Assembly (NCBI RefSeq): GCF_006345805.1 | Contig: NC_043026.1 | Location: forward strand, 12,999,579 to 13,063,578 | Direction of reading: 5' to 3' | Source: Octopus sinensis | Lineage: Eukaryota | Length of the DNA stretch: 64,000 nucleotides | In this document: positions 21,112 through 58,900 of the stretch, piece after piece | How the letters are laid out: the number at the start of each line of letters is the position of its first letter | How positions within the stretch are numbered: position 1 is the stretch's first letter | Position numbers and translations under genes: made by a program | Notes under the pieces: model-generated | Seen by the model: only the letters and a program-made list of their open reading frames with translations | Told to the model about the DNA's origin: nothing | The model's database searches: none

Positions 21112-21138
21112 ATATATATACATACATACATATACATA

Positions 21139-21170
<32 letters not shown>

Positions 21171-21207
21171 CATATACATACATACATATATATATATACA
21201 CATACAT
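20330..21207. repeat. ~880-bp compound (TA)n microsatellite with CA/GA interruptions
   Basis: Seen directly. Confidence 0.98.
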
Positions 21208-24395: not shown

Positions 24396-25009
24396 AATTT
24401 AAAAAGAAATAATCACAATTCGATGATTTCGATTCGAAAGACGAGCAATAGGCGGTGTCGTTGATAAGCTTTCCCCTAGTGTAAACGATACCGGTGACAT
24501 ATATTAAAAATCCCCAACATAATATAACACACGCCCAATTACATTAATTTACGTTATTGATTGTATCCAGCATCACACAACACAATTTCATGTAGACAGG
24601 AGTGAGCTTCGACGTGGTCTTTCGACCTTGTAGAAATAACAGCTAAGTCTCAAATAGATTACATCATTCTGACTTAACAAAACAAAGGAGACATTCTACA
24701 GTGCGGTCTTCGACAAATAATTGTTGTTGACACACTACGGCAGAAATTGTATTCACCTTAATAGACGTCATTGATTGGTTGATATTGCTGAAATGCAAGA
24801 GATTAAACAACAAATAGCTTACAAACTACAGAATTTTCTCAAAAGAGCCGAGAGAAAAAAATGTTTTAGGTAACACACTTCCAGTATACGAAGTTTTAAA
24901 GTATTTAGTTACAAAAAAATTATTTTAAAAATCTGCCGGTCAAAATGAAAAGATCCGTTATTTCTATATTTTATGCAAACAAAATGCACAAGAAAGCTAC
25001 ACGTTTGCA

Positions 25010-25192
25010 TTATGTTATATATACAATAATAATAAAGGATGTTACCGTATACATTTCTACAAACCAAGGACGTTATATGGATCTCCTTGACTCAAGTCAG
25101 AGAAGGGGTGCGTATTATACACAAGGTTTAGGTTTTTCAGAGGTACAGACCCCTAAAAATCCCCCGGGCGGACTATACTCGAGGATTTACGG
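25010..25192. mobile_element. Hybrid half of a Tc2/pogo-like MITE (left border of the integrated block)
   Basis: Ends ...tatactcgaggatttacgg|TA; homologous to the reverse complement of 52211-52360. Confidence 0.8.
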
Positions 25193-25765
25193 TACATTGC
25201 TATAATATCCGAAGCGTACTCATTTCCAGTTGAAAACTATATTCTAACCAAACGTTTTTTTGAGTGGGGATTTTTATTTTCGTCACCGCTTATATTCAAA
25301 CAAGGGAAAAAGTATCATCGACACCGTCTATTTTCTAATTTTCTTAATTAAATCTTTAAATCATTCGTTTTTTCGGATGAACGTTACCGGGCTACGAACA
25401 AGTCTGGTTTTTAGGGGTTCGTTCGACCCAACTCGACAAAACCAAAGCAAACATTCCACTGTCCCAGATTAATTATTTCATTTGATCAAAGCTTTAAATC
25501 GTTAATTGGTTTTTCCCTATTTTACAGAAAAGGAGGAAATGGCTTTTAATCAACAACAAATCAATCAACGAACTTTCTTCAGCCTTCTCCACTCTTCATT
25601 TGGACTTTATACCAAACATTCTACTGGTGAGTAGGAAATATATCTACATTGCATCTGTTCCACACTTGTAAACGGAGGACTGTGATATCTGAGACAAGAA
25701 ATTGAACCACAATAAATTAACTCACAGACGTTTGTCAGCTTTTTAAGAATTGCTCAAGAAATAAT

Positions 25766-28700
25766 ATGGAGACCGTTGATCACTTGGACACAATTGTTTT
25801 GAACGATACAGATACAGATAGAGAGACAGACGGGGATGAGAAAACTGTTAATGGTGAAGTATTTACTAAAGAAAGATCGAGACAGGGAAATATCACCGAA
25901 TATAAATGTGATGTTTGTAGGAAGACATTCTCTTCGGAGCAAGAAGTCTTTAAACACAAAGAAACACACAATAAGGAAAAAGCCTATAATTGTGAAATAT
26001 GTGGGAAATATTTTGTCTCTGAAGATGTCTTAACAAAACACAAACGGATACACACTGGAGCAAGACTGTTTCATTGTGAGATCTGTGGAAAATCGTTTCA
26101 ATGCAATTCTCATCTTGCAATACACACTCGTAGTCACACTGGGGAGAAACCATTCAAGTGTGAAATATGTGCAAAATCATTTGTCTGTAAAAGTGTACTA
26201 AAAATTCACAAAAGAATCCACTCTGGAGGAAAATTATTTCATTGTGAAATTTGTCAGAAATATTTTCTATTTAACAGTGATTTAAACAGACATAAACGAA
26301 TCCATAGTGGTGAGAAACCGTTTAGTTGTGAGATCTGCGGGAAATCATTTCTTAACAATTCTCATCTTGCAACACACACACGTCGTCACACTGGGGAGAA
26401 ACCATTCAAGTGTGAGATATGTGCAAAATCATTTATCTGTAAAAGTGAGCTAACATTTCACAAAAGACTCCACACTGGAGAAAAATTACTCCATTGTGAA
26501 ATATGTCCGAAATATTTTCGTTTTAACTGTGATTTAAACAGACATTTAAGAACACATTCAAGTGAAAAACCATTCCACTGTGAAACGTGTGGGAAAAGCT
26601 TTACTGATAACAGTGGCTTAACGAAACACAAAGGAATCCACACTGGAGCAAGACTGTTTCATTGTGAGATCTGTGGAAAATCGTTTCAATGCAATTCTCA
26701 TCTTGCAATACACACTCGTAGTCACACTGGGGAAAAACCATTCAAGTGTGAAATATGTGCGAAATCATTTGTCTGTAAAAGTGTACTACACAAACATAAA
26801 AGGATCCACTCTGATGAGAAACCCTTCAGTTGTGAGATCTGCGGGAAATCATATATTAACAATTCTGATCTTATTCTACACACTCGTAATCACACTGGGG
26901 AGAAACCATTCAAGTGTGAAATATGTGCAAAATCATTTGTCTGTAAAAGTGAACTAAACAAACATAAAAGGATCCACTCTGATGAGAAACCCTTCAGTTG
27001 TGAGATCTGTGGAAAATCGTTTCTTTGCAATTCTCATCTTGCAATACACACTCGTAGTCACACTGGGGAGAAACCATTCAAGTGTGAAATATGTGCAAAA
27101 TCATTTGTCTGTAAAAGTGAACTAAACAAACATAAAAGGATCCACTCTAATGAGAAACCCTTCAGTTGTGAGATCTGTGGAAAATCGTTTCTTTGCAATT
27201 CTCATCTTGCAATACACGCTCGTAGTCACACTGGGGAGAAACCATTCAAGTGTGAAATATGTGCAAAATCATTTGTCTGTAAAAGTGAATTAAACAAACA
27301 TAAAAGGATCCACTCTGATGGGAAACCCTTCAGTTGTGAGATCTGCGGGAAATCATTTCTTAGAAATTCTGAACTTTCAGTACACACACGTCGTCACACT
27401 GGGGAGAAACCATTCAAGTGTGAAATATGTGCAAAATCATTTGTCTGTAAAAGTGAACTAATCAAACATAAAAAGATCCGCTCTGATGAGAAACCGTTTA
27501 GTTGTGAGATCTGCGGGAAATCATATATTAACAATACTGATCTTGTCCTACACACACGTCGTCACACTGGGGAAAAACCATTCAAGTGTGAAATATGTGC
27601 AAAATCATTTGTCTGTAAAAGTGTACTAACAGCTCACAAAAGGATCCACTCTGATGAGAAACCCTTCAGTTGTGAGATCTGCGGGAAATCATTTCTTAGA
27701 AATTCTGATCTTGTTCGACACACACGTAGTCACACTGGGGAAAAACCATTCAAGTGTGAAATATGTGCAAAATCATTTGTCCGTAACAGTGTTTTAAACA
27801 GCCATAAAAGAATCCACTCTGATGAGAAACCCTTCAGTTGTGAGATCTGAGGGAAATCATTTCTTAGAAATTCTGATCTTGTTCTACACACACGTCGTCA
27901 CACTGGGGAGAAACCATTCAAGTGTGAAATATGTGCAAAATCATTTGTCTGTAAAAGTGAACTAAACAAACATAAAAGGATCCACTCTGATGAGAAACCC
28001 TTCAGTTGTGAGATCTGCGGGAAATCATTTCTTAGAAATTCTGATCTTGTTCTACACACTCGTAGTCACACTGGGGAAAAACCATTCAAGTGTGAAATAT
28101 GTCAGAAATCATTTGTTTGTAAAAGTGTACTAACAGCTCACAAAAGAATCCACTCTGATGAGAAACCCTTCAGTTGTGAGATATGCTTCAAATCATTTCT
28201 TAACAATTCTGATCTTGTTCTACACACACGTTGTCACACTGGGGAGAAACCATACAACTGTGAGATATGTGCAAAATCATTTATCTCAAAATGTCGACTA
28301 AAAATTCACAAAAGACTCCACACTGGAGCAAGACTGTTTCATTGTGAGATCTGTGGAAAATATTTTCTCTCCAATTATGCTTTAAACAGGCATAAACAAA
28401 CACATACAGGGGAGAAGCCTCACCATTGTGAGGTGTGTGGAAAAAGTTTCACTCAAGCCTCTCATCTTGCAGTTCACAAACGGATCCACACAGGAGAAAG
28501 ACCTTTCCACTGCAGGGTTTGTGGCAAATCTTATAATACAAATTTTACTCTTGTTCTTCACTTACGTAGTCACACAGGTGAAAGACCTTTCCATTGTGAA
28601 ATCTGTGGTAAATCCTTCTCTAATAATTCTTCTCTTGTAGTTCACAAACGAACTCACACTGGAGATAAACCTTTCCATTGTGGAATATGTGGAAAGTCTT

Positions 28701-29782
28701 TTGTCAGGAGCAGCCACTTAAACACACACAAATTTATTCACTCTAGAGGAAAAAGGTTTCACTGTGAAATGTGCGGGAAATGGTTCACTCTTAATTCTAC
28801 GCTTGTCATTCATAAACGAATTCACACTGGAGATAAACCTTTCCATTGTGGAATATGTGGAAAGTCTTTTGTCAGGAGCAGCCACTTAAACACACACAAA
28901 TTTATTCACTCTAGAGGAAAAAGGTTTCACTGTGAAATGTGCGGGAAATGGTTCACTCTTAATTCTACGCTTGTCATTCATAAACGAATTCACACCGGAG
29001 AAAAGCCTTATTGTTGTGATATATGTGGCTCATTGTTTGTCTCTCGCAGTAACTTAACGAAGCACGAACGAGTCCATACAGGAGACAAACCATTTGGCTG
29101 TGAAATATGTGGAAAATCTTTTGTTTGTAGCAGTGACTTAACGAGGCATAGAAGGGTCCATACTGGGGAAAAACCTTTCCACTGTGAAATATGTGGAAAA
29201 TCTTTTTCTCAGAATCCTCATCTTGTAATTCACAAACGTGGCCACACTGGAGAAAAGCCGTTCCACTGTGAAATGTGTGGGACATCATTTGTGTCTAGCA
29301 CTACCTTAACACAACACAAAAGGATACACTCAAAAGAGAAAGCATTTGGCTGTGAAATATGTGGGGAATCTTTTGTTTGTAGCAGTAAATTAACGAGGCA
29401 TAAAAGACTGCATTCTGAACAGAAACGCTTCCACTGTGAAATGTGTGGAAAATCTTTTACTCTGAATTCTCGTCTTGTAATTCACAAACGTCATCACACT
29501 GGAGAGAAGCCGTTCCACTGTGAATTCTGTGGGACATCGTTTGTGTCTGAGAGTGGCTTAACAAAACACAAAAGGATACATAAAGTTGAAGGACGTTTTT
29601 TTTGTGAAATCTGTGGGAAATGTTTTGCATCTAACAGTAACTTAACAGAACACAAAAGGGTCCATGCAGGGGAACAACGTTTTCCTTGTGAAATCTGTGG
29701 GAAATGTTTTGCATATAACAGTAACTTAACAGAACATAAAAGGATTCACTCTGGAGGGAAACCTTTTAACAGTGGAATATGA
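25766..29782 (+). CDS. Chimeric C2H2-ZNF frame: 46-aa leader + 46 finger repeats (1,338 codons) with a single in-frame TGA at 27848-27850; the upstream ORF alone gives 694 aa / 23 fingers
   Basis: Both ORF pieces (25766-27850 and 28433-29782) are in the same frame. Manual translation of 27851-28432 shows no stop. Confidence 0.88.
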
Positions 29783-32632
29783 TAAATCCTTAAAAACTTA
29801 CCAGGAATGGGACCAAAACATAAGAAAACGAGATCGGTTTGAGACGAAATCGTTAGTAAACGAATGAAGGACAAAATAATGAGCAGAATAAAGGTTTAGG
29901 GCCCCAGGAAAACAAGGATTAAATGAAAATAGTCGATAGAGAGCAAGAAAAGCCTTTGGGCTGCTGGACAAGACAAGAATGGGGAATGCGAAAGAGAAAT
30001 GAAAACTGTTGTAAAGGACAATGAACACTGGGTCGGTAGAGCAAGGAGCTCAAAAAATTGTGACCAGTGCGGACGAGGGCAACGCGTAAAAAGAATGACC
30101 ACTGCCTCAGGCAATCACCAATCACATTCTCAAGCAGTAATGTAATTTAGATAGAGATCGTTATGGCCAGTGTCATAGGCCACCGGCTGTTAGTGTCTGA
30201 AGGGGTGGTGTAGTGCTGTGTATTTTCTGGATGCAGAACCCTGGGTAACCCCATAGAACAGCCATAACTATCTTCATCTAATATATATGTATGTGTGTAA
30301 ATAGGTTTCTTTGTGTCTGCATCTGGCAAGTTATCTAACGCCTTTCCTCAGTCTGGTATAATAATATAGATCAGACTGGAGCCTGGTGCAGCCTCCTGGC
30401 TTCCCAGACCCTGGTCGAACTGTCCAACCCATGCTAGCATGGAAAACGGACATTAAATGATGATGATATGTATGTGTGTGTGTATAATTTCAGTAAATCA
30501 TGAATAGAAAAGAGAAGTATACTCTAAGTCATAGAGTAATTAGACAAAGGTAGTTATGGGCAGTGTATGGTTTTACACAGGGATTTGAGTGCATGAAGGG
30601 CTTAGCTTTACAGCATCTCTTCAGAAATTTATGGTTGGTCACCAGGGGCATAAGCTGTTACGATCTGACAACTGCTCTAAAACTAAGCCCAGAGGCCAGC
30701 CACAACTATCTTTATCTAATATACATGTTTCTTTCTGTTTGCATCTTACAAGTTCTTTTCTCCGTCTGCTATAATAATATAGAACACTTGTCCAAGACAT
30801 CTCATAGTGGGACTGAAACCGATATCAACATGGTATGGTTTAGAAAAGTGTCTAAATTCTGTAATGGTGGTCATGTTGGAATATGAAACCAACAGCTGGA
30901 GAGAGATTCATCCAAGTGAAACCTTTTCACTTTACCTCGTCTATCACTAATTTTTAATTAAAACCACAGGAAATTCAAAATCATTTTAAATAAAAATTTA
31001 TTCTTTATATTCCTTAGACTAGCATAAAACCACAAATTATTCAATGATGAAATCAGAAACAAGCAAAGAACATTCAATGTAAAAAGCAGACTTTCCTTTT
31101 CTTTGTGTCAATCAGATCCAGCAAAAACAGAGATCACTGAGAAATTTAGGCAAAACTTTATCATTGAAATTTGTGAGGAAATATTTTTTTGTCAATTTAA
31201 AATATTTTGTTAAAAATGTTCTGAATTTTGAAATTAAAATCCTTTCATTTTAATAATTTGTTGCATTATATTTTCTGGTCAGTTGATGTGATTCTTTCCA
31301 TTTTGATTCTTGAGTGAAAAACTTTCTTTTATTAAACAACATAAAACCACGTTTGCACTGCCAACTCCCTTATAATCAGGGGCTGTATTGTTCCCCTTCC
31401 AATCGAGGCTGCAGGTTTCTGCTTTCCAATCTTCATTTCTACTCCCTGATCTTTTATTCTTTGTTGCAGTCATTTTCCTGACAGGTATGAGGAAACAATG
31501 TCTGTAGGGGCAGGTGGAGGTGTACATTTGTACAGGTAAGCCTATATCAGTGGGGGAAGTTATTAAAGTACATACTATTAACAATAAAAATTTGCACAAT
31601 GACTTCTGAGTGCAACCTATGGCAACGGTTCACCTGCCCTCAGCATCTCTCTCTCCCTCCAACTCCGTTTCTGGCTTAAGTTTCCGTCTGCCGGCCTGAG
31701 CGATGTGGAACACATTGCATTTTATGAAATGGAAGTCAAGATTTGAATGGACTTACAAATACGAAAGACAAAAAGAACAACGAAGCAGAGATGCTTTTAT
31801 AGAAAGCGAGTGGAATATCTGTTGGATGTCTTGCAAACTACTTGCACATGCAAGAGCTACCAGTTAAAAGCTCCGTATACCGGAAGCTAGCAAGTGTATG
31901 GGGTCATCAGGAGAGAATGCGCGCCGTTTCGGGGCCTACCTCTCGACGGCTCCCCCTCACTGATATGAGGCCCCGCTTGCTAGATCAGCTGGTTATGAAG
32001 TTAAACTCAACATCCTTCTAGCCATCGCTCATCGTCTCTTTTTAACCAAATCCAGTGGCTAGCCTTCTCCATTTCGGGGCCTACTTCTCGACGGCATCAA
32101 TGCGCACTGCCCCCCACCTCACTGATATGAGGCCCCGCTTGCTAGATCAGCTGGTTATGAAGTTAAGCTCAATATCCTTCTAGCCATCACTCATCGTCTC
32201 TTTTTAACCAAATCCAGTGGCTAGCCTTCTCCACCGTAGATTAGAAAAGCATTTATGAGAGACAAACGCGAAAAATAAAGAAAACGATTCCAGCTCGTGT
32301 GGAATGATTTGAACGTATAAAACTTGTAAACAGAAACAAATTGGACAGCTTCAAAAGCTAGAATCACTTACAGAAAAAGAAGTTTATATATATGTAAATA
32401 TATAAACAAAGTTACGTAGCATATTGTAGAAGGGGTGAAGAAATGTTACTGGCTTTAGGAAAAGAAAGTACAAGTGGATCAGTTATTTAGGATTTTATTC
32501 AACGTCCCCTTCTCACATTCATTCAGTGCAGCCAATCTTCAGTTTTTCTAGGTCATCTAAAAGAACTCGGAAGGTGGGGCCTGAAACCAGGCCTTCCGCC
32601 ACCCACTTAAAGTCGGGAGCTGCCCTCATATA
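29783..32632. repeat. Segmental duplicate (inverted) of 52639-55484
   Basis: Collinear reverse-complement match at both ends and throughout, including the shared ~145-160-bp tandem duplication at 31927-32233. Confidence 0.95.
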
Positions 32633-33150
32633 CCGTAAATCCTCGAGTATAATCCGCATTTTTCCCCCAAAATTTAAAGGTCAGAATCCCTAGTGCGTAC
32701 TATATACGAGGTTCAAAAATGACAATTATTTTCTAAGCAATGACCAAGTCTCTATTTGCTGTCCGGCAATGTTTATTCAGACGCATTTTGTGATGTCGGG
32801 CGCTAAAATACCTTCAGCTAAGCCTGAAAGCAATGAAGTCATAAAAGAATCATCCATAACTTGCAATAAGCAACATTTATTAAACGTTATTACTGTTATT
32901 TCTTTATTTTATGTTATATATACAATAATAATAAAGGATGTTATATAGATCTCCTTGACTCAAGTTAGAGAAGGGGTGCGTATTATACACCAGGTTTAGG
33001 TTTTTCAGAGGTACAGCCCCCTAAAAATCCTCTGCGTATTATACCCAAGGGCGTGAAAATACCTTAAGCTAAGCCTGAAAGCAATGAAGTCATAAAAGAA
33101 TCATCCATAACTTGCAATAAGCAACATTTATTGAACGTTATTATTGTTAT
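32633..33150. mobile_element. Hybrid Tc2/pogo-like MITE (right border of the integrated block) plus a partial internal repeat
   Basis: TA|ccgtaaatcctcgagtataatccgc TIR; the distal TIR is absent and the sequence diverges from the 52211 copy after 32990. Confidence 0.8.
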
Positions 33151-33604
33151 TGGATCTTTTTGCTGAACGGCAGACTTTTAAAATAATTTCTTTGTAATTA
33201 AACACTTTTAAACTTCGTATACTGGTATAAATGTGTTTACATAACTTCTTTTACACTTGGCTTTCTTGAGAAAATTCTGTAGTTTGTAAGCTATTTGTTG
33301 TTTAATTTCTTGCATTTCAGCAATTTCAACCAATCAATGACGTCTATTGAGGTGAATACAATATCTCCGGATCTTTGTCAACAACAATTACTTGCTGTGT
33401 CTTCTTCTATGTTTAGCAGTTGGAAGAAGGCAGTCTGGGTCAAATGCTTCTTTTGGCTGTCTCCACATGTATACTAGGCCAGTGGGGTCGATCTAATTTA
33501 CTGGCTCCCTCCCCCCAAATTTCAGGCCTTGTGCCTAGAGTAGAATAGAATATTCATAACTTCTGATGATTTGCTGTGCATTGCAATATTTAAAAGAGAT
33601 TTAA

Positions 33605-34845
33605 AATAATAATGAAATTATTGTATACAGTGCTCAGGTGCACCACAACTTGTCAGAAAGTGCGTATAAAGCATATGCAGTAATGTACAAATGTCTGGAA
33701 AGCGAACAGTGTATGAGTCAGAGACATGCTTGTGTGTGTATGGAGGGGAGAAAATCAGGTGTAGTGTTGGCGAATCTCAGGAAGTTTTGAAGGATGCAGT
33801 GCTCTGACAACTAACAAGTGATGCCGGCAGTTTGTTCCATGCTTCAGCAACTCTTAGCATGAAAAAATGTTTCCTGAAGTCATGGGAGCTGTGCTGTTTG
33901 CTGACTTTGTAAATATGACCATGGGTGTTAGACAGGTGGAGTTTGAAAAGGTGCTCAGAGTTATTGTTTATAAGATGGTTGATAATTTTATGGGTGTCTG
34001 CCAAGTCAGCTGCCAGACGTCGGAGTTTCAATGTGTCCATGCCCAGGGAAGTAAAGCGTTCATAATATGGCAAATGCCTGATGGAGGGTATTCTCTTGGT
34101 TGTCAGATACATGCTTGCGTGTGTATGGAGGGAAGAAAATCAGGTGTAGTGTTGGCGAATCTCAGGAAGCATGGAAGTTTTGAAGGATGCAGTGCTCTGA
34201 CAACTAACAACTGATGCCGGCAGTTTGTTCCTTGCTTCAGCAACTCTCAGCTTGAAAAATGTTTCCTGAAGTCATGGGAGCTGTGCTGTTTTTTACTTTG
34301 TAAATATGTCCACGGGTGTTAGATGGGTGGAGTTTGAAAAGGTGCTCAGAGTTATTGTTTGTACGATGGTTAATAATTTTATGGGTGTCTGCCAAGTCAG
34401 CTGCCAGACGCCAGAGTTTCAATGTGTCCATGCCCAGGGAAGTAAAGCGTTCATAATATGGCAAATGCCTGATGGAGGGTATTCTCTTGGTTGTCAGATA
34501 CATGCTTGCGTGTGTATGGAGGGAAGAAAATCAGGTGTAGTGTTGGCGAATCTCAGGAAGCATGGAAGTTTTGAAGGATGCAGTGCTCTGACAACTAACA
34601 ACTGATGCCGGCAGTTTGTTCCTTGCTTCAGCAACTCTCAGCTTGAAAAAATGTTTCCTGAAGTCATGGGAGCTGTGCTGTTTTCTTACTTTGTAAATAT
34701 GTCCACGGGTGTTAGATGGGTGGAGTTTGAAAAGGTGCTCAGAGTTATTGTTTGTACGATGGTTAATAATTTTATGGGTGTCTGCCAAGTCAGCTGCCAG
34801 ACGCCAGAGTTTCAATGTGTCCATGCCCAGGGAAGTAAAGCGTTC
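33605..34845 (-). mobile_element. CR1/L2-clade LINE 3' end, triplicated in tandem (~385-391-bp unit)
   Basis: atggaggg..gaaaatcagg at 33740, 34125 and 34516; ORFs with MDTLKL...TRGHIYKV...RVAEA motifs. Confidence 0.9.
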
Positions 34846-49603: not shown

Positions 49604-51601
49604 TCATATTCCACAGTTAAGAGATTTCCTTCCTCTGTGAATCCTTTTGTGTTGTGTTAAGTTACTGCTAGTGGCAAAAGATTTTCCACAGATTTCACAG
49701 CGGAAAGGTTTTTCCCCTGTATGGATTCTTCTATGCTTCGTTAAGCTACTGCTATAATTAAAAGATTTCCCACATATCTGACAGCCAAATGGTTTCTCCC
49801 CTATATGTCTTCTTTGGTGTTTCGTTAAGATACTGTTAGACACAAACGATGTCCCGCAGATTTCACAGTGGAAAAGTTTTTCTCTTGTGTGGACACGTTT
49901 GTGAATTACAAGATGATAACTCTGAAAAAAAGATTTTCCACATACTTCGCAGAGGAAAGGCTTTTCTCCAGTATGGCCACGTTTGTGACATATGAGATGG
50001 GAATTCTGAGAAAAAGATTTTCCGCATATTTCACAGTGGAAAGGTTTCTCCCCAGTATGCAGTCGTTCATGCCTCGTTAAGTCACTGCCACAAACGAAAG
50101 TTTTCCCACAGATTTGACAGCGAAATGGTTTCACTCCTGAATGGATTCGTTTGTGTTTTGTTAAGTTGCCATTGTAGGCAAACAATGTGCCGCATATTTC
50201 ACAACGATACGGTTTTTCCCCAGTGTGACTCTGCTGATGTCTGACAAGAGTAGAATTTTGAGTGAAACACTTCCTGCATATTTCACAGCGAAGCAGTTTT
50301 CGTCCAGAGTCATTCAATTTGCACGTATTTAAGAGGCTGTTACCAACGAAGGGTTCCCCAAATATTTCATGGAAAGGCTTCTCTTCAGCGTGACTTCGTT
50401 TGTGAACAACAAGAAGAGAATTATCGGAGAAAGATTTCTCACACACTTCACAACGGTAGGGATTTTCTCCAGTGTCACTACGTTGGTGTTCAACGAGGCA
50501 TGGTTTATCAGCAAATGATTTTCCACCTATTTCAAAGCGATAAATATTTTCTCCAGTGTGACTAAGTTTGTGACGAACCAAATTAAAATTAACAGAGAAT
50601 GATTTACCACAGATATCACAATGATGTGGTTTCTCCCCGGTATGTGTTCGCTTATGTTTCTTTAAAGCACTATTACAGAAAAAATAATTTCCACATATCT
50701 CACAATCATAGGATTTTTCCCCCGTGTGGATCCGTTTGTGTTTCGTTAAGCCACTGTTATCAGTAAAGCTTTTCCCACACGTTTCACAGTGGAATGGTTT
50801 TTCACGTGAATGTGTTCTTAAATGCCTGTTTAAATCACAGTTAAAACGAAAATATTTCGGACATATTTCACAATGGAGTAATTTTTCTCCAGTGTGGAGT
50901 CTTTTGTGAAATGTTAGCTCACTTTTACAGATAAATGATTTTGCACAGATTTCACACTTGAATGGTTTCTCCCCAGTGTGACGACGTGTGTGTAGAACAA
51001 GATCAGAATTGTTAAGAAATGATCTCCCGCAGATCTCACAACTAAACGGTTTCTCACCACTATGGATTCGTTTATGTCTGTTTAAATCACTGTTAGATAA
51101 AAAATATTTCTGACAAATTTCACAATGAAATAATTTTCCTCCAGAGTGGATTCTTTCGTGAATTTTTAGTACACTTTTACAGACAAATGATTTTGCACAA
51201 ATTTCACACTTGAATGGTTTCTCCCCAGTGTGACTACGAGTGTGTAGAACAAGATCAGAATTGTTAATGAATGATTTCCCGCAGATCTCACAATGAAACA
51301 GTCTTGCTCCAGTGTGTATCCGTTTGTGTTTCGTTAAGACATCTTCAGAGACAAAATATTTCCCACATATTTCACAATTATAGGCTTTTTCCTTATTGTG
51401 TATTTCTTTGTGTTTAAAGACTTCTTGCTCCGAAGGGAATGTCTTCCTACAAACATCACATTTATATTCGGTGATATTTCCCTGTCTCGATCTTTCTTTA
51501 GTAAATACTTCACCATTAACAGTTTTCTCATCCCCGTCTGTCTCTCTATCTGTATCTGTATCGTTCAAAACAATTGTGTCCAAGTGATCAACGGTCTCCA
51601 T
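49604..51601 (-). CDS. C2H2 zinc-finger protein 'B', 665 aa: 46-aa leader + 22 repeats (repeats 12 and 14 degenerate)
   Basis: Intact ORF with the conserved 5' module. Confidence 0.93.
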   Translation of the reverse strand: METVDHLDTIVLNDTDTDRETDGDEKTVNGEVFTKERSRQGNITEYKCDVCRKTFPSEQEVFKHKEIHNKEKAYNCEICGKYFVSEDVLTKHKRIHTGARLFHCEICGKSFINNSDLVLHTRSHTGEKPFKCEICAKSFVCKSVLKIHERIHSGGKLFHCEICQKYFLSNSDLNRHKRIHSGEKPFSCEICGRSFLNNSDLVLHTRRHTGEKPFKCEICAKSFICKSELTFHKRLHTGEKLLHCEICPKYFRFNCDLNRHLRTHSREKPFHCETCGKSFTDNSGLTKHKRIHTGEKSYDCEICGNYFFCNSALKKHKRTHTGEKPHHCDICGKSFSVNFNLVRHKLSHTGENIYRFEIGGKSFADKPCLVEHQRSDTGENPYRCEVCEKSFSDNSLLVVHKRSHAEEKPFHEIFGEPFVGNSLLNTCKLNDSGRKLLRCEICRKCFTQNSTLVRHQQSHTGEKPYRCEICGTLFAYNGNLTKHKRIHSGVKPFRCQICGKTFVCGSDLTRHERLHTGEKPFHCEICGKSFSQNSHLICHKRGHTGEKPFLCEVCGKSFFQSYHLVIHKRVHTREKLFHCEICGTSFVSNSILTKHQRRHIGEKPFGCQICGKSFNYSSSLTKHRRIHTGEKPFRCEICGKSFATSSNLTQHKRIHRGRKSLNCGI

Positions 51602-52210
51602 ATTATTTCTTGAGCAATTCTTAAAAAGCTGACAAACGTCTGTGAGTTAATTTATTGTGGTTCAATTTCTTGTCTTAGATATCACAGTCCTCCGTTTACA
51701 AGTGTGGAACAGATGCAATGTAGATATATTTCCTACTCACCAGTAGAATGTTTGGTATAAAGTCCAAATGAAGAGTGGAGAAGGCTGAAGAAAGTTCGTT
51801 GATTGATTTGTTGTTGATTAAAAGCCATTTCCTCCTTTTCTGTAAAATAGGGAAAAACCAATTAACGATTTAAAGCTTTGATCAAATGAAATAATTAATC
51901 TGGGACAGTGGAATGTTTGCTTTGGTTTTGTCGAGTTGGGTCGAACGAACCCCTAAAAACCAGACTTGTTCGTAGCCCTGTCTTATCCGCAAACGGTAAC
52001 GTTCACCTCAACATGAGATAATTACTACGAATGATTTAATTAGATTTAATTAAGAAAATTAGAAACACGGTAGACGGTGTCGATGATACTTTTTCCCTTG
52101 TTTGAATATAAGCGGTGACGAAAATAAAAATCCCCACTCAAAAATAAACGTTTGGTTAGAATATAGTTTTCAACTGGAAATGAGTACGCTTCGGATATTA
52201 TAGCAATGTA

Positions 52211-52638
52211 CCGTAAATCCTCGAGTATAGTCCGCCCAGGGGATTTTTAGGGGTCTGTACCTCTGAAAAACCTAAACCTTGTGTATAATACGCACCCCTT
52301 CTCTAACTTGAGTCAAGGAGATCTATATAACATCCTTTATTATTATTGTATATATAACATAAAATAAAGAAATAACAGTAATAACGTTTAATAAATGTTG
52401 CTTATTGCAAGTTATGGATGATTCTTTTATGACTTCATTGCTTTCAGGCTTAGCTGAAGGTATTTTCGCGCCCGACATCACAAAATGCGTCTGAATAAAC
52501 ATTGCCGGACAGCAAATAAGGACTCGGACATTGCTTAGAAAATAATTGTCATTTTTGAACCTCGTATATAGTACGCACTAGGGATTTTGACCTTTAAATT
52601 TTGGGGGAAAAAAGCAGATTATACTCGAGGATTTACGG
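52211..52638. mobile_element. Complete Tc2/pogo-like MITE (428 bp)
   Basis: TIRs ccgtaaatcctcgagtata(g/a)tc(c/t)gc; TA at 52209-10 and 52639-40. Confidence 0.85.
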
Positions 52639-55484
52639 TATATGAGGGCAGCTCCCGACTTTAAGTGGGTGGCGGAAGGCCTGGTTTCAGGCCCCACCTT
52701 CCGAGTTCTTTTAGATGACCTAGAAAAACTGAAGATCGGCTGCACTGAATGAATGTGAGAAGGGAACATTGAATAAAATCCTAAATAACTGATCCACTTG
52801 TACTTTCTTTTCCTAAAGCCAGTAACATTTCTTCACCCCTTCTACAATACGCTACGTAACTTTGTTTATATATTTACATATATATAAACTTCTTTTTCTG
52901 TAAGTGATTCTAGCTTTTGAAGCTGTCCAATTTGTTTCTGTTTACAAGTTTTATACGTTCAAATCATTCCACACGAGCTGGAATCGTTTTCTTTATTTTT
53001 CGCGTTTGTCTCTCATAAATGCTTTTCTAATCTACAGTGGAGAAGGCTAGCCACTGGATTTGGTTAAAAAGAGACGATGAGCGATGGCTAGAAGGATATT
53101 GAGCTTAACTTCATAACCAGCTGATCTAGCAAGCGGGGCTTCATATCAGTGAGGGGGGGGGCAGTGCGCATTGATGCCGTCGAGAGGTAGGCCCCGAAAT
53201 GGAGAAGGCTAGCCACTGGATTTGGTTAAAAAGAGACGATGAGCGATGGCTAGAAGGATGTTGAGTTTAACTTCATAACCAGCTGATCTAGCAAGCGGGG
53301 CCTCATATCAGTGAGGGGGGCCGTCGAGAGGTAGGCCCCGAAATGGCTCGCATTCTCTCCTGATGACCCCATACACTTGCTAGCTTCCGGTATACGGAGC
53401 TTTTAACTGGTAGCTTTTGCCTGTGCAAGTAGTTTGCAAGACATCCAACAGATATTCCACAGCATCTCTGCTTCGTTGTTCTTTTTGTCTTTCGTATTTG
53501 AAAGTTCATTCTAATCTTGACTTCCATTTCATAAAATGCAATGTGTTCCCCATCGCTCAGGCCGGCAGACGGAAACTTAAGCCAGAAACGGAGTTGGAGG
53601 GAGTGAGAGTGAGAGATGCCCAGGGCAGGTGAACCGTTGCCATAGGTTGCACTCAGAAGCCGTTGTGCAAATTTTTATTGTTGATAGTATGTACTTTAAT
53701 AACTTCCCCCACTGATATAGGCTTACCTGTACAAATGTACACCTTCACCTGCCCCTACAGACATTGTTTCCTCATACCTGTCAGGAAAATGACTGCAACA
53801 AAGAATAAAAGATCAGGGAGTAGAAATGAAGATTGGAAAGCAGAAACCTGCAGCCTCGATTGGAAGGGGAACAATACAGCCCCTGATTATAAGGGAGTTG
53901 GCAGTGCAAACGTGGTTTTATGTTGTTTAATAAAAGAACGTTTTTCACTCAAGAATCAAAATGGAAAGAATCACATCAACTGACCAGAAAATATAATGCA
54001 ACAAATTATTAAAATGAAAGGATTTTAATTTCAAAATTCAGAACATTTTTAACAAAATATTTTAAATTGACAAAAAAATATTTCCTCACAAATTTCAATG
54101 ATAAAGTTTTGCCTAAATTTCTCAGTGATTTCTGTTTTTGCTGGATCTGATTGACACAAAGAAAAGGAAAGTCTGCTTTTTACATTGAATGTTCTTTGCT
54201 TGTTTCTGATTTCATCATTGAATAATTTGTGGTTTTATGCTAGTCTAAGGAATATAAAGAATAAATTTTTATTTAAAATGATTTTGAATTTCCTGTGGTT
54301 TTAATTAAAAATTAGTGATAGACGAGGTAAAGTGAAAAGGTTTCACTTGGACGAATCTCTCTCCAGCTGTTGGTTTCATATTCCAACATGACCACCATTA
54401 CAGAATTTAGACACTTTTCTAAACCATACCGTGTTGATATCGGTTTCAGTCCGACTATGAGATGTCTTGGACAAGTGTTCTATATTATTATAGCAGACGG
54501 AGAAAAGAACTTGTGAGATGCAAACAGAAAGAAACATGTATATTAGATAAAGATAGTTGTGGCTGGTCTATGGGCTTAGTTTTAGAGCAGTTGTCAGATC
54601 GTAACAGCTTATGCCCCTGGTGACCAACCAGAAATTTCTGAAGAGATGCTGTAAAGCTAAGCCCTTCATGCACTCAAATCCCTGTGTAAAACCATACACT
54701 GCCCATAACTACCTTTGTCTAATTACTCTATTGCTCTATGACTTGGAGTATACTTCTCTTTTCTATTCATGATTTACAGAAATTATACACACACACATAA
54801 ATATCATCATCATTTAATGTCCGTTTTCCATGCTAGCATGGGTTGGACAGTTCGACCAGGGTCTGGGAAGCCAGGAGGCTGCACCAGGCTCCAGTCTGAT
54901 CTATATTATTATACCAGACTGAGGAAAGGCGTTAGATAACTTGCCAGATGCAGACACAAAGAAACCTATTTACACACATACATATATATTAGATGAAGAT
55001 AGTTATGGCTGTTCTATGGGGTTACCCAGGGTTCTGCATCCAGAAAATACACAGCATTACACCACCCCTTCAGACACTAACAGCCGGTGGCCTATCACAC
55101 TGGCCATAACGATCTCTATCTAATTACATTACTGCTTGAGAATGTGATTGGTGATTGCCTGAGGCAGTGGTCATTCTTTTTACGCGTTGCCCTCGTCCGC
55201 ACTGGTCACAATTTTTTGAGCTCCTTGCTCTACCGACCCAGTGTTCATTGTCCTTTACAAGTTTTCATTTCTCTTTCGCATTCCCCATTCTTGTCTTGTC
55301 CAGCAGCCCAAAGGCTTTTCTTGCTCTCTATCGACTATTTTCATTTAATCCTTGTTTTCCTGGGGCCCTAAACCTTTATTCTGCTCATTATTTTGTCCTT
55401 CATTCATTTACTAACGATTTCGTCTCAAACCGATCTCGTTTTCTTATGTTTTGGTCCCATTCCTGGCAAGTTTTTAAGGATTTA

Positions 55485-57905
55485 TCATATTCCACTGTTA
55501 AAAGGTTTCCCTCCAGAGTGAATCCTTTTGTGTTCTGTTAAGTTACTGTTATATGCAAAACATTTCCCACAGATTTCACAAGGAAAACGTTGTTCCCCTG
55601 CATGGACCCTTTTGTGTTCTGTTAAGTTACTGTTAGATGCAAAACATTTCCCACAGATTTCACAAAAAAAACGTCCTTCAACTTTATGTATCCTTTTGTG
55701 TTTTGTTAAGCCACTCTCAGACACAAACGATGTCCCACAGAATTCACAGTGGAATGGCTTCTCTCCAGTGTGATGACGTTTGTGAATTACAAGACGAGAA
55801 TTCAGAGTAAAAGATTTTCCACACATTTCACAGTGGAAGCGTTTCTGTTCAGAATGCAGTCTTTTATGCCTCGTTAATTTACTGCTACAAACAAAAGATT
55901 CCCCACATATTTCACAGCCAAATGCTTTCTCTTTTGAGTGTATCCTTTTGTGTTGTGTTAAGGTAGTGCTAGACACAAATGATGTCCCACACATTTCACA
56001 GTGGAACGGCTTTTCTCCAGTGTGGCCACGTTTGTGAATTACAAGATGAGGATTCTGAGAAAAAGATTTTCCACATATTTCACAGTGGAAAGGTTTTTCC
56101 CCAGTATGGACCCTTCTATGCCTCGTTAAGTCACTGCTACAAACAAAAGATTTTCCACATATTTCACAGCCAAATGGTTTGTCTCCTGTATGGACTCGTT
56201 CGTGCTTCGTTAAGTTACTGCGAGAGACAAATAATGAGCCACATATATCACAACAATAAGGCTTTTCTCCGGTGTGAATTCGTTTATGAATGACAAGCGT
56301 AGAATTAAGAGTGAACCATTTCCCGCACATATCACAGTGAAACCTTTTTCCTCTAGAGTGAATAAATTTGTGTGTGTTTAAGTGGCTGCTCCTGACAAAA
56401 GACTTTCCACATATTCCACAATGGAAAGGTTTATCTCCAGTGTGAGTTCGTTTGTGAACTACAAGAGAAGAATTATTAGAGAAGGATTTACCACAGATTT
56501 CACAATGGAAAGGTCTTTCACCTGTGTGACTACGTAAGTGAAGAACAAGAGTAAAATTTGTATTATAAGATTTGCCACAAACCCTGCAGTGGAAAGGTCT
56601 TTCTCCTGTGTGGATCCGTTTGTGAACTGCAAGATGAGAGGCTTGAGTGAAACTTTTTCCACACACCTCGCAATGGTGAGGCTTCTCCCCTGTATGTGTT
56701 TGTTTATGCCTGTTTAAAGCATAATTGGAGAGAAAATATTTTCCACAGATCTCACAATGAAACAGTCTTGCTCCAGTGTGGAGTCTTTTGTGAATTTTTA
56801 GTCGACATTTTGAGATAAATGATTTTGCACATATCTCACAGTTGTATGGTTTCTCCCCAGTGTGACAACGTGTGTGTAGAACAAGATCAGAATTGTTAAG
56901 AAATGATTTGAAGCATATCTCACAACTGAAGGGTTTCTCATCAGAGTGGATTCTTTTGTGAATACTAAGTACACTTTTAGATACAAATGATTTCTGACAT
57001 ATTTCACACTTGAATGGTTTCTCCCCAGTGTGACTACGTGTGTGTAGAACAAGATCAGAATTGGTAATACAAGATTTCCCGCATATCTCACAACTGAAGG
57101 GTTTCTCATCAGAGTGGATTCTTTTGTGAATTCTAAGTACACTTTTAGATACAAATGATTTCTGACATATTTCACACTTGAATGGTTTCTCCCCAGTGTG
57201 ACTACGTGTGTGTAGAACAAGATCAGAATTGTTAATATATGATTTCCCGCAGATCTCACAACTGAAGGGTTTCTCATCAGAGTGGATCCTTTTATGTCTG
57301 TTTAAAACACTGTTACAGGCAAATGATTTTGCACATATTTCACACTTGAATGGTTTCTCCCCAGTGTGACGACGTGTGTGTACTGAAAGTTCAGAATTTC
57401 TAAGAAATGATTTCCCGCAGATCTCACAACTGAAGGGTTTCTCATCAGAGTGGATTCTTTTATGGTTGTTTAAAACACTGTTATGGACAAATGATTTCGC
57501 ACAAATTTCACACTTGAATGGTTTCTCCCCAGTGTGACTACGAGTGTGTATTGCAAGATGAGAATTGCATTGAAACGATTTTCCACAGATCTCACAATGG
57601 AACAGTCTTGCTCCAGTGTGTATCCGTTTGTGTTTCGTTAAGACATCTTCAGAGACAAAATATTTCCCACATATTTCACAATTATAGGCTTTTTCCTTAT
57701 TGTGTATTTCTTTGTGTTTAAAGACTTCTTGCTCCGAAGGGAATGTCTTCCTACAAACATCACATTTATATTCGGTGATATTTCCCTGTCTCGATCTTTC
57801 TTTAGTAAATACTTCACCATTAACAGTTTTCTCATCCCCGTCTGTCTCTCTATCTGTATCTGTATCGTTCAAAACAATTGTGTCCAAGTGATCAACGTTC
57901 TCCAT
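55485..57905 (-). CDS. C2H2 zinc-finger protein 'A', 806 aa: 46-aa leader + 27 fingers
   Basis: Intact ORF with the conserved 5' module (internal deletion). Confidence 0.93.
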   Translation of the reverse strand: MENVDHLDTIVLNDTDTDRETDGDEKTVNGEVFTKERSRQGNITEYKCDVCRKTFPSEQEVFKHKEIHNKEKAYNCEICGKYFVSEDVLTKHKRIHTGARLFHCEICGKSFQCNSHLAIHTRSHTGEKPFKCEICAKSFVHNSVLNNHKRIHSDEKPFSCEICGKSFLRNSELSVHTRRHTGEKPFKCEICAKSFACNSVLNRHKRIHSDEKPFSCEICGKSYINNSDLVLHTRSHTGEKPFKCEICQKSFVSKSVLRIHKRIHSDEKPFSCEICGKSCITNSDLVLHTRSHTGEKPFKCEICQKSFVSKSVLSIHKRIHSDEKPFSCEICFKSFLNNSDLVLHTRCHTGEKPYNCEICAKSFISKCRLKIHKRLHTGARLFHCEICGKYFLSNYALNRHKQTHTGEKPHHCEVCGKSFTQASHLAVHKRIHTGERPFHCRVCGKSYNTNFTLVLHLRSHTGERPFHCEICGKSFSNNSSLVVHKRTHTGDKPFHCGICGKSFVRSSHLNTHKFIHSRGKRFHCDMCGKWFTLNSTLVIHKRIHTGEKPYCCDICGSLFVSRSNLTKHERVHTGDKPFGCEICGKSFVCSSDLTRHRRVHTGEKPFHCEICGKSFSQNPHLVIHKRGHTGEKPFHCEMCGTSFVSSTTLTQHKRIHSKEKAFGCEICGESFVCSSKLTRHKRLHSEQKRFHCEMCGKSFTLNSRLVIHKRHHTGEKPFHCEFCGTSFVSESGLTKHKRIHKVEGRFFCEICGKCFASNSNLTEHKRVHAGEQRFPCEICGKCFAYNSNLTEHKRIHSGGKPFNSGI

Positions 57906-58900
57906 ATTATTTCTTGAACAATTCTTAAAAAGCTGACAAACGTCTGTGAGTCAATCTCCAATGGTTCAATTTCTTGTCTTAGATATCACAGTCCTCCGTT
58001 TACAAGCGTGGAACAGATGCAACGTAGATGTATTTCCTACTCACCAGTAGAAAGTCCAAATTAAAAGCCATTTCCTCCTTTCCTGTAAAATAGGGAAAAA
58101 CCAATTAACGATTTAAAGCTTTGATCAAATGAAATAATTAACACCGATCATCACACTTGCTCGTCGCCCTGCCTTATCCACAAACAGTAACGTTCACCTT
58201 AACATAAGATAATTACTACATACGATTATAATTAGATTTACCTGAAATAATTAGAAACACAAACACAGTAGACGGTGTCGATGATCATTTTTCCCGTTTG
58301 TATAACGGCGGTGACAAACATGAAAATCCCCACTCAAAAATAAACATTTGGTTAGAATATAGTTTTCAACAGTCTATAACTGCGCATCGGATACAGTATT
58401 AATGTATACGAAGGGTGCCCCTGGCTTTAAGGGTGTTGCGAAAGGCTTGGCTGCAGGCCCAACCTTCCGGGTTGTTTAACAGGGCTTCGAAAAACTGAAG
58501 GATGAATGTGAGAAGGGGGTCATGTTGAATAAAATCCTAAATGACTGATCCACCTGTATTCTCTTTTCTTAGAGTCAGGAACTTTTCATCATCTACCCTA
58601 CATTACGCTGTGTATCTTTTGAAGTTGTCTAATTCTTTTTTCAGTTTATAATTTTCAGAGGAAGGTAAAATTACCCACCCCCGGTGGTTAGGGTTACGCC
58701 AAAAACGGGTGGCGTGCGTATTGTTTTTTTCACCTCCGCCTATGTTTCATACTTTCAAAACATTCAAAACCGGCTGGAATCGCTTGTTTATTTTTCGCCT
58801 TTGTTTCATAAATAGTTTTTGTGGTGTTATGAGCCAGGCTGTGTTTTAGGGAAGGACCGGAAGTGAGGCCTGTGGGTCCCACCGATCGTTCCCTACAACA

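What the first reader, a model, noticed from the sequence alone, without database searches (positions are those of the whole stretch)
25099..32990. Gene birth via a circular DNA intermediate: inverted, circularly permuted 6.9-kb block integrated by a single crossover in a MITE
Seen: the donor order (minus strand, 57905 to 49604) is A - flank - MITE - promoter B - B. The copy (plus strand) reads MITE end - promoter B - B(F1-9)/A(F3-27) - flank - MITE start, which is a circular permutation of ~50729-57620 (~6.9 kb; 7.9 kb after 12 extra fingers). The two MITE borders carry reciprocal markers. The left border differs from the donor before a 24-bp window (G25079, C25098, a ~30-bp insert) and matches after it (one further mismatch at ~25165). 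The right border matches the donor up to 32990 and differs after it (C32991, C33017, divergence past 33030). The window agagaaggggtgcgtattatacac (25099-25122 = 32967-32990) is duplicated. Inference: recombination between paralogs A and B looped out a circle on a sister or homologous chromosome, and it re-entered by Campbell-type crossover with a resident MITE. A three-switch replication template-switching path gives the same product. ZNF repeats would supply the excision homology and MITEs the landing pads, giving a transposase-independent route to cluster expansion.
Basis: partly seen in the sequence, partly recalled or inferred. Interest (0 to 1): 0.92.

Follow-up and report, generated by a model that had tools for sequence, protein, structure and literature searches.

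The report
Permuted inverted copy making hybrid zinc-finger gene
A 7.9-kb block carrying a hybrid of two neighbouring zinc-finger genes really is an inverted, circularly permuted copy of the stretch between those genes. A free DNA circle is only one of several routes that give exactly this product, and the kind of event is already described in other animals.

Summary
Copy C (25099-32990, + strand) is a circular permutation of donor interval 50729-57620 (6,892 bp, - strand), in inverted orientation. It has one in-frame joint, B finger 9 to A finger 3. A 24-bp window is duplicated at both borders.

New evidence settles the polarity. The region upstream of gene A is the empty site of the donor MITE, so the donor order is ancestral and C is derived. 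C and donor differ by 1.2-1.5% in non-coding DNA.

- The landing pad is not a canonical MITE. It has no TIRs of that family. It is the 327-bp loop of a foldback with 243-bp arms, related to the MITE interior in permuted order.
- The A/B joint rests on 5 bp of microhomology inside a 27-bp linker, not on long homology.
- The SNP "reciprocal markers" are weak on their own (order probability 1/6).
- C carries an in-frame stop at codon 695, so "gene birth" is unproven.

Mechanism: the product cannot tell apart a reintegrated circle, break-induced template switching, or a tandem duplication followed by two repeat-mediated inversions. I lean slightly to template switching. This is a new member of a known kind.

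The parts
24714..24956 (.). Left arm of the resident foldback (inverted repeat of 33152-33394)
   Evidence: BLAST gives 85.8% over 247 aligned columns. The repeat finder reports arm pairs of 152 nt (88%) and 62 nt (90%). The joined flanks fold as one long hairpin.
24957..25098 (+). Resident loop, left part. It is related to the MITE interior (P-end, Q, start of W), carries two extra segments (about 34-39 bp and 30 bp, each flanked by short direct repeats), and has G25079 and C25098.
   Evidence: Three-way alignment; BLAST blocks
25099..25122 (+). 24-bp exchange window, left copy
   Evidence: Exact 24-mer found only at 25099, 32967 (+) and 52281 (-)
25123..25196 (+). Donor-type right end of the MITE, including TIR-R (25174-25194)
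   Evidence: One mismatch in 98 bp to the donor over 25099-25196; exact 21-mer TIR
25197..25765 (+). B-type promoter and 5' leader. It holds a cluster of five C-specific deletions and six substitutions at 25256-25388.
   Evidence: C equals B at nearly all sites that distinguish A from B. Cluster of 11 events in 150 bp, p = 8.5e-5 per window over 73 windows.
25766..29782 (+). Hybrid gene C: 46 C2H2 fingers, 1,338 codons, one in-frame stop
   Evidence: Pfam C2H2 hits on both pieces, searched separately
26639..26643 (+). B finger 9 / A finger 3 joint: 5-bp CACAC inside a 27-bp linker with one A/B mismatch; in frame
   Evidence: Site-by-site comparison of C with B9-10 and A2-3
26644..28168 (+). 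C10 (= A3) plus an expanded two-finger (168-bp) array, C11-27, where A has A4-10. It includes units unique to C (C13 = C25, C14, C16).
   Evidence: TRF gives period 168 with 12.2 copies in C against 5.6 in A. No better donor exists elsewhere in the window.
27848..27850 (+). In-frame TGA replacing a zinc-binding Cys codon of finger 24
28169..29782 (+). A-derived fingers C28-46, with one extra 168-bp duplication (C35-36)
   Evidence: 5 differences in 1,446 bp, of which 4 are synonymous
29783..32627 (+). Copy of the A-to-MITE intergenic flank
   Evidence: 48 mismatches in 3,190 aligned bp (1.5%), counted together with the left MITE part
32628..32990 (+). Donor-type left part of the MITE, including TIR-L (32631-32651). 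The right copy of the 24-bp window is at 32967-32990.
32991..33151 (+). Resident loop, right part: diverged end of W (C32991, C33017), a 20-bp TIR-like motif, and a second copy P' (33049-33151) of MITE segment P
33152..33394 (.). Right arm of the resident foldback
49604..51601 (-). Donor gene B: 665 aa, 22 fingers, intact
51602..52206 (-). Donor promoter of B
52207..52640 (-). Donor MITE-like element: about 430 bp, 27/30 matching TIRs, TA on both sides, complete
   Evidence: It is absent from the paralogous site upstream of A.
52641..55484 (-). Donor flank between A and the MITE
55485..57905 (-). Donor gene A: 806 aa, 27 fingers, intact
58300..58640 (-). Region upstream of A: the paralogous empty site of the MITE. 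It reads straight through the point where the B upstream region carries the MITE.
   Evidence: Alignment with homology on both sides of a gap of about 430 bp

Best explanation
C is a real, young, derived paralog. It was copied from the A-flank-MITE-promoterB-B donor by an event that left exactly two kinds of new joint.

- **Joint 1.** B finger 9 is fused in frame to A finger 3, at 5 bp of microhomology in the conserved linker.
- **Joint 2.** There is an exchange inside a 24-bp identical window. The partners are the interior of the donor MITE and an older, inverted, MITE-related sequence that forms the loop of a 243-bp-arm foldback 19 kb away. This exchange duplicates that patch at both borders of C.

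**Most likely path (inferred).** I think a single break-repair or replication episode is most likely.
1. A break or collapsed fork occurs in the foldback loop.
2. The broken end invades the inverted MITE homology.
3. Synthesis copies promoter B and B fingers 1-9.
4. Synthesis switches back 6.9 kb to A finger 3 at the linker microhomology.
5. Synthesis copies the rest of A, the flank and the left half of the MITE.
6. The new strand is captured by the other broken end, again through the MITE homology.

No free circle and no transposase are needed.

**Shown:** the permutation, both joints, the polarity, the age, and the foldback context. **Inferred:** that the event was replicative and took one step.

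**Later changes in C:** expansion of the two-finger array, small gene-conversion patches, promoter deletions, and a nonsense mutation.
For: - **Permutation and joints:**
- **Polarity:** the region upstream of A is contiguous across the MITE site. The MITE is complete in the donor but inside-out in C.
- **Single age:** 1.2% in promoter B, 1.5% in the flank, and about 1.2% at synonymous sites in the A-derived part.
- **Joint 1** has only 5 bp of identity inside 27 bp. That is typical of template switching or end joining, not of classical unequal crossover.
- **Joint 2** pairs sequences that lie in inverted orientation and in cis, 19-27 kb apart.
- **Insertion point:** it is the loop of a long inverted repeat.
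- **Mutation cluster:** five deletions and six substitutions, all derived in C, lie 135-270 bp inside the left joint. Error-prone repair synthesis would leave this kind of mark.
- **Tandem-unit gains:** unit gains inside the copied finger arrays also fit an unstable copying fork.
- **Donor state:** the donor is left intact with no residual tandem copy.
Against: - The path needs three switches, including an exact return to the starting repeat.
- There are no templated insertions at the joints themselves.
- The foldback arms are only about 86% alike with a 327-nt loop, so the site is not a strong hairpin.
- The promoter mutation cluster could equally reflect relaxed constraint, or one later complex mutation.
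- The array expansion could have come later, by unequal exchange.
- The final sequence is formally identical under the circle and the serial-inversion paths, so nothing in this window decides between them.
Confidence: 0.4

Rival explanations
1. The 6.9-kb segment became an extrachromosomal circle, closed at the B9/A3 joint. The circle arose either directly or by pop-out from a tandem-duplication allele. It then re-entered by one homologous crossover (Campbell type) with the MITE-related resident sequence.
For: - The circular permutation has a single fusion joint.
- The homologous patch is duplicated at both borders. Donor-type sequence lies inside and diverged sequence outside.
- The donor shows no leftover tandem copy, which is the criterion used in PMC7188851 to exclude false positives.
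- There are precedents in cattle, tilapia and human.
Against: - No circle is observed.
- It needs two rare events in one cell lineage, plus transfer to a sister or homologous chromosome or a prior tandem allele.
- The landing site is only 19 kb away, in a non-canonical and diverged relative of the MITE. That fits a cis process better than a free episome does.
- SNP support for reciprocity is weak (chance 1/6).
- The model does not explain the C-specific mutation cluster next to the joint.
Confidence: 0.25
2. This is serial ordinary recombination.
1. A microhomology tandem duplication gives A-flank-MITE-pB-(B/A)-flank-MITE-pB-B.
2. An inversion follows, between one donor MITE and the inverted resident homolog.
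3. The segment between the resulting inverted repeats of more than 5 kb then flips.

The result is the present order with the same hybrid borders.
For: - Working the path through on paper from the mapped blocks gives exactly the observed structure.
- The shared exchange window is reproduced as long as the second crossover lies anywhere in the 5 kb to its left.
- The resident homolog is inverted relative to the donor MITE, as this path requires.
- A and B are themselves tandem duplicates.
- Another young inverted duplicate pair lies next door.
- PMC7188851 names tandem duplication as the standard mimic of the circle signature.
Against: - It needs three events, and a tandem allele must persist long enough for the second event.
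- The first inversion must use only about 100-170 bp of 95% homology with a 24-bp perfect core.
- No trace of the tandem state remains in this haplotype.
Confidence: 0.2
3. This is an assembly artefact. C would be a piece of a second haplotype, for example one carrying a tandem duplication, wrongly joined into the foldback through shared repeat sequence.
For: Both borders lie in repeats, which is where false joins occur. No read data are available to check this. The donor proteins are not on record in public assemblies.
Against: - C differs from the donor by 1.2-1.5%, by 12 extra fingers, and by private indels.
- Both joins would have to pass through a perfect overlap of only 24 bp.
- The outer border sequences are unique and fit together as one foldback.
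- The window has no gaps.
Confidence: 0.07
4. Reverse polarity: C is the parent, and a circle excised from it between its two MITE halves integrated into a single ancestral gene, creating A and B.
For: The crossover topology is symmetric, so the border markers alone cannot give the direction (reasoning).
Against: - The flank end and promoter B, which lie at opposite ends of C, are contiguous in the paralogous region upstream of A.
- The donor MITE is complete, with matching TIRs and TA flanks, whereas C has an inside-out MITE.
- Both points make the donor order ancestral.
Confidence: 0.02

Closest known systems
Duplication or translocation through circular DNA intermediates. Examples: cattle KIT colour-sidedness (Durkin 2012, doi 10.1038/nature10757); tilapia vasa (PMC3245284); human segmental duplications (PMC7450558); human eccDNA-mediated duplications (PMC7188851).
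   Same: The copy is a circular permutation of a contiguous donor, with one fusion joint. The donor is retained, and the copy is inserted at a non-tandem site.
   Different: - Here both joints sit in homology: 5 bp within 27 bp, and 24 bp within about 100-170 bp. The human cases show no homology at their breakpoints.
- The insertion duplicates the homologous patch.
- The copy lies only 19 kb from the donor and is inverted.
- The fusion joint creates an in-frame hybrid gene.
- As in those papers, the circle itself is inferred, not observed.
Replicative template switching (FoSTeS / MMBIR / break-induced replication) that produces complex rearrangements. Named from established knowledge, and discussed in PMC7450558.
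   Same: There are several joints from what looks like one event. Homology-guided and microhomology joints are mixed. Inverted repeats serve as switch points. Small mutations cluster near one joint.
   Different: There are no templated insertions at the joints, and the path needs an exact return to the starting repeat. The one-step nature is not testable here.
Tandem duplication followed by inversions between inverted repeats (non-allelic homologous recombination)
   Same: It gives the identical final order and hybrid borders. The cluster's own A/B pair is a tandem duplicate.
   Different: No tandem intermediate is visible. The homology available for the first inversion is short and 5% diverged.
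Gene capture between the inverted ends of DNA transposons (Pack-MULE-type transduplication; foldback-flanked segments). Recalled from established knowledge.
   Same: A host gene segment now lies between the two arms of an inverted-repeat element.
   Different: A whole 7.9-kb gene with its promoter was acquired through internal homology. There is no evidence that the arms are mobile or that the composite has moved.

Membership tests
Circular-intermediate (eccDNA-type) duplication | Copy is a circular permutation of one contiguous donor interval | tested here: met
   donor 50729-57620 is read as 52304->50729 and then 57620->52281
Circular-intermediate (eccDNA-type) duplication | A single internal fusion joint joins the two donor ends | tested here: met
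   B9/A3 joint at 26639-26643
Circular-intermediate (eccDNA-type) duplication | No tandem duplication at the donor that could mimic the pattern (criterion of PMC7188851) | tested here: inconclusive
   None is present in this haplotype. A past or polymorphic tandem allele cannot be excluded.
Circular-intermediate (eccDNA-type) duplication | Physical circle carrying the fusion joint | not testable with these tools
   Needs Circle-seq or outward PCR on germline DNA
Campbell-type single-crossover integration | Homologous patch present once in the donor and duplicated as direct repeats at both ends of the insert | tested here: met
   25066-25162 and 32934-33030 both match donor 52337-52241
Campbell-type single-crossover integration | Reciprocal hybrid borders: resident type outside, donor type inside | tested here: inconclusive
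   The pattern is present. It rests on 2+2 SNPs (order probability 1/6) plus diverged outer homology with indels. Error-prone synthesis could mimic the SNPs.
Campbell-type single-crossover integration | Empty-site allele with one resident patch | not testable with these tools
   Joining the flanks gives a plausible 813-bp foldback, 24714-25122 plus 32991-33394 (joined a slightly wider 843 bp). No second haplotype is available.
MITE (TIR transposon derivative): donor element 52207-52640 | Terminal inverted repeats | tested here: met
   27/30 match; exact 21-mers at both ends
MITE (TIR transposon derivative): donor element 52207-52640 | Target-site duplication and an empty site | tested here: met
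   TA on both sides (only 2 bp, so weak). The paralogous site upstream of A lacks the element.
MITE (TIR transposon derivative): donor element 52207-52640 | Multi-copy family | tested here: inconclusive
   The 64-kb window has only one complete copy, plus the two halves in C. The rest of the genome cannot be searched.
MITE: resident landing pad | TIRs of the same family at its outer ends | tested here: not met
   One search finds four TIR matches only, all donor-derived. The outer ends are 243-bp foldback arms instead.
Classical unequal crossover (NAHR) between paralogs A and B | Exchange within an extended tract of high identity | tested here: not met
   5 bp of identity within 27 bp carrying one mismatch. 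The 297-bp identical 5' coding tract was not used.
Replicative template switching (MMBIR / FoSTeS) | Microhomology joint(s) and small mutations near the joints | tested here: inconclusive
   Joint 1 fits. A C-specific indel and substitution cluster lies 135-270 bp from the left joint. Other causes are possible.
Functional C2H2 poly-zinc-finger gene (gene C) | C2H2 fingers in an uninterrupted reading frame | tested here: not met
   The fingers are confirmed, but there is an in-frame TGA at codon 695. The 4:1 synonymous:nonsynonymous ratio in the 3' part suggests the stop is recent.

The most novel reading that the evidence does not exclude
A germline extrachromosomal circle, closed by a short match between the linkers of two neighbouring zinc-finger genes, re-entered the chromosome by homologous crossover in a transposon-derived patch. 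This created a new promoter-bearing hybrid gene. If so, dispersed transposon relics would act as homology landing pads for a transposase-free, recurrent mode of zinc-finger cluster growth.
Probability: 0.25. Interest if true: 0.6.

Novelty: new member of a known kind. Interest (0 to 1): 0.45.

Why it matters
Zinc-finger clusters grow fast, and how new members arise is mostly put down to tandem duplication. This locus shows, at base-pair resolution, a hybrid gene that combines the promoter and first nine fingers of one gene with the later fingers of its neighbour. The hybrid sits inverted, 19 kb away, inside a repeat.

If the route could be proven, it would be one of the cleanest homology-guided examples of the permuted duplications reported in cattle, fish and humans. 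Those cases lacked homology at their joints.

The locus also predicts two testable variants. One is flipping of the 19.2-kb spacer between the 5-kb inverted repeats. The other is an empty foldback site.

As it stands, it is a well-resolved example of a known class rather than a new principle.

Tried and rejected
- **Exact-protein look-ups for A and B in public assemblies** found nothing on record. No second haplotype or other individual could be compared.
- **Protein homology search** with the first open piece of C (694 aa, up to the stop) returned only generic poly-zinc-finger proteins at 55% identity or less. The species could not be identified, and no annotated C-like hybrid turned up.
- **Other copies of the MITE or its TIR in the window:** none beyond the donor and the two halves in C. 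Family consensus and copy number remain unknown.
- **Templates in the window for the two extra segments in the left border:** none.
- **"C is the parent of A and B":** rejected on the empty-site evidence.
- **Two independent duplications landing side by side:** rejected. Both pieces end in the same MITE with an overlapping patch, they meet in frame at a homologous linker, and they have the same age.
- **Helitron-type capture:** rejected. The ends lack the expected terminal bases (read).
- **Another paralog as donor of the extra fingers:** rejected. No match above 86% exists outside A, B and C.
- **Mismatch cluster near the right joint (32655-32804):** not significant after correcting for the number of windows.
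Full report
**Observation**

A self-comparison of the window shows two colinear blocks between the 25-33 kb region (+ strand) and the 50-58 kb region (- strand).
- 25066-26679 matches 52337->50688 at 95.1%.
- 27571/28757-33034 matches 57696/56511->52237 at 97.6% over the unique flank.

On the minus strand the donor reads gene A (57905-55485), flank, MITE (52640-52207), promoter of B, gene B (51601-49604). The copy reads MITE right part, promoter B, hybrid gene, flank, MITE left part. This is an inverted circular permutation.

Donor 52237-52337 is present at both borders of the copy. The interval equivalent to one circle is 50729-57620, which is 6,892 bp. The copy between the duplicated windows is 7,892 bp. 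The 24-mer AGAGAAGGGGTGCGTATTATACAC occurs only at 25099, 32967 (+) and 52281 (-).

- On the left, a 30-bp extra segment, G25079 and C25098 lie before the window. After it there is one private mismatch at 25165.
- On the right, there is identity to the donor for 186 bp up to 32990. Then come C32991 and C33017, and collinear homology decays past 33030.

**Genes**

A (806 aa, 27 fingers) and B (665 aa, 22 fingers) are intact single-exon C2H2 genes. C spans 25766-29782, with 1,338 codons and 46 fingers. It has one in-frame TGA at codon 695 that replaces a zinc-binding cysteine of finger 24. The two open pieces were searched separately.

Finger-by-finger DNA identity gives this map:

| C fingers | Match |
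|---|---|
| C1-2 | A and B fingers 1-2 |
| C3 | A3 at 99% (B3 only 85%) |
| C4-9 | B4-9, about 98% (C6 93%; C9 89%, its tail being the joint) |
| C10 | A3 |
| C11-27 | expanded 168-bp two-finger array related to A4-10 |
| C28-34 | A11-17 at 99-100% |
| C35-36 | a clean extra 168-bp duplication |
| C37-46 | A18-27 |

That is 12 fingers more than B1-9 plus A3-27.

The B-to-A switch lies within 26639-26643. This is 5 bp (CACAC) inside a 27-bp linker in which A and B differ once. Upstream of the gene, C follows B at essentially every site that distinguishes A from B.

**Polarity (new)**

The region upstream of A (58300-58640) aligns on both sides of the donor MITE and reads straight through the insertion point. 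The donor MITE is complete: 27 of 30 TIR positions match, exact 21-mers sit at 52209-52229 and 52620-52640, and TA flanks both sides. In C the two TIRs face outward (25174-25194 on the minus strand, 32631-32651 on the plus strand). The two halves of an ancestrally contiguous upstream region lie at opposite ends of the block.

The donor order is therefore ancestral and C is derived. The idea that C is the parent of A and B is rejected. The crossover markers alone could not have decided this, because the topology is symmetric.

**Age and state of C**

| Region | Differences |
|---|---|
| Promoter B (non-coding) | 7/569 (1.2%) |
| Flank plus left MITE part (non-coding) | 48/3,190 (1.5%) |
| A-derived fingers (coding) | 5/1,446; 4 synonymous, so synonymous divergence is about 1.2% |

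The 4:1 synonymous:nonsynonymous ratio has a binomial p of about 0.016 against neutrality. So the 3' part stayed under constraint for most of its history, and the stop is probably recent.

The B-derived part shows 6 synonymous and 6 nonsynonymous changes outside two short conversion patches, in finger 3 and finger 6.

The expanded array contains unit types found only in C: C13 = C25 (identical), C14 and C16. No donor elsewhere in the window matches better than 86%. At least part of the expansion therefore happened in C.

Five deletions and six substitutions are packed into 25256-25388. All are derived in C when A is used as outgroup. This is 11 events in 150 bp, with p = 8.5e-5 per window over 73 windows.

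"Gene birth" is therefore possible but unproven. C may be a truncated 23-finger gene or a fresh pseudogene.

**The landing site (correction)**

No TIR of the MITE family lies outside the borders. The block sits between inverted arms 24714-24956 and 33152-33394, which are about 86% alike. A third, truncated arm copy lies at 63733-63909.

Joining the two flanks at the shared window gives a foldback of about 810 bp (24714-25122 plus 33,152-bounded right half 32991-33394) with a 327-nt loop (which joined a slightly wider 843 bp).

The loop is related to the MITE interior, but in permuted order:
- On the left are the end of segment P, then Q and W, with two extra pieces of about 34-39 and 30 bp flanked by short direct repeats.
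- On the right are the diverged end of W, a 20-bp TIR-like motif, and a second copy P' (33049-33151), which is 96% identical to donor P.

Identity to the donor falls stepwise across the right border, from 100% to about 95% to about 70%. That is what an older resident homolog would give. The four border SNPs alone are weak evidence, since the chance of their order is 1/6.

**Mechanism**

The product has two new joints, and it equals [quoted passage not shown]. Three routes give exactly this sequence.

2. **One break-repair or replication episode with three template switches.** Two switches use the inverted MITE homology and one uses the linker microhomology.
3. **Serial recombination.** A microhomology tandem duplication is followed by an inversion between a donor MITE and the inverted resident homolog. 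The segment between the resulting inverted repeats of more than 5 kb then flips. Worked through on paper from the mapped blocks, route 3 reproduces the hybrid borders and the single shared window, provided the last crossover falls anywhere in the 5 kb to its left.

PMC7188851 explicitly lists tandem duplication as the standard mimic of the circle signature.

I lean slightly to route 2, for these reasons:
- The A/B joint uses 5 bp, although 297 bp of perfect A/B identity were available in register.
- The partners are in cis, inverted and close together.
- The insertion point is the loop of a long inverted repeat.
- A cluster of copy-specific small mutations lies just inside one joint.
- Only one rare episode is needed.

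None of this is decisive. My split is 0.40 template switching, 0.25 circle, 0.20 serial recombination, 0.07 misassembly, and 0.02 reverse polarity, with the remainder for paths not considered.

**Comparison with what is known**

Permuted duplicates attributed to circular intermediates are published for cattle KIT (Durkin 2012), tilapia vasa (PMC3245284) and human segmental duplications (PMC7450558, PMC7188851).

The human cases lack homology at their breakpoints. Here both joints lie in homology, the patch is duplicated, the copy is local and inverted, and the fusion joint builds an in-frame hybrid gene. That makes this a clean new member of a known kind, not a new principle.

**Predictions and limits**

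The present structure carries inverted repeats of about 5 kb (C 28169-33034 against donor 56930-52237) around a 19.2-kb spacer that contains B. Inversion isomers of this spacer are therefore expected in populations.

No reads, second haplotype or outgroup could be reached, so the path remains open.

Noticed in passing
15506-17443 and 22138-23913: A second young inverted duplicate pair (95.7-98%) carries zinc-finger gene fragments. The two copies differ by one 168-bp two-finger unit and lie tail to tail around a 4.7-kb spacer. Inverted duplication therefore recurs in this cluster.
   Followed up: partly
20334-21198: An 865-bp (TA)n tract, with GC about 23% locally, lies in the spacer of that inverted pair. 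It is self-complementary.
   Followed up: no
16514-17040 and 22542-22899: Finger-like tandem arrays have an 85-bp period (97-98% matches). The period is not a multiple of three, so these arrays cannot encode regular fingers.
   Followed up: no
25774-26070 vs 51593-51297 and 57897-57601: A and B are identical over 297 bp of 5' coding sequence, while their promoters are clearly diverged and carry several indels. This suggests ongoing gene conversion or strong constraint. B finger 3 carries a 13-site patch that differs from both A3 and C3, probably a conversion in B after C arose.
   Followed up: partly
33717-34846 and 49044-49444: Fragments of a retrotransposon reverse-transcriptase tail lie in opposite orientation near the two ends of the spacer between C and B. 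The 33.7-34.8 kb one is a 391-bp unit repeated 2.9 times. They are about 80% alike, and Pfam gave no hit on the short ORF.
   Followed up: no
9378-9916, 35066-35603, 47353-47918 and many single copies (e.g. 62295-62489): A repeat of about 175-189 bp with a tRNA-like head is abundant, often in tandem triplets. From memory it resembles a cephalopod SINE. That would fit the known C2H2 expansions in those animals (PMC12513265), but the species was not identified. This is a lead, not a test.
   Followed up: no
63975-64000: TTAGGG-like telomere-type repeats begin at the very end of the window.
   Followed up: no
63733-63909: A third copy of the foldback arm (about 76% identity) is cut on its inner side by another repeat that is also present in the A-MITE flank (53787-54148).
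   Followed up: partly
53038-53158 / 53200-53320 (and 31952-32071 / 32112-32233 in C): A 121-bp local direct repeat (97.5%) lies inside the flank and is present in both donor and copy, so it is older than the duplication.
   Followed up: no
38584-40035 (-) and 23843-24247 (-): Further paralogous zinc-finger genes share the same short acidic N-terminus (MENV.HLDT...). One lies in the spacer and one lies immediately left of the foldback. The foldback lies about 470-710 bp upstream of the latter's start codon.
   Followed up: no
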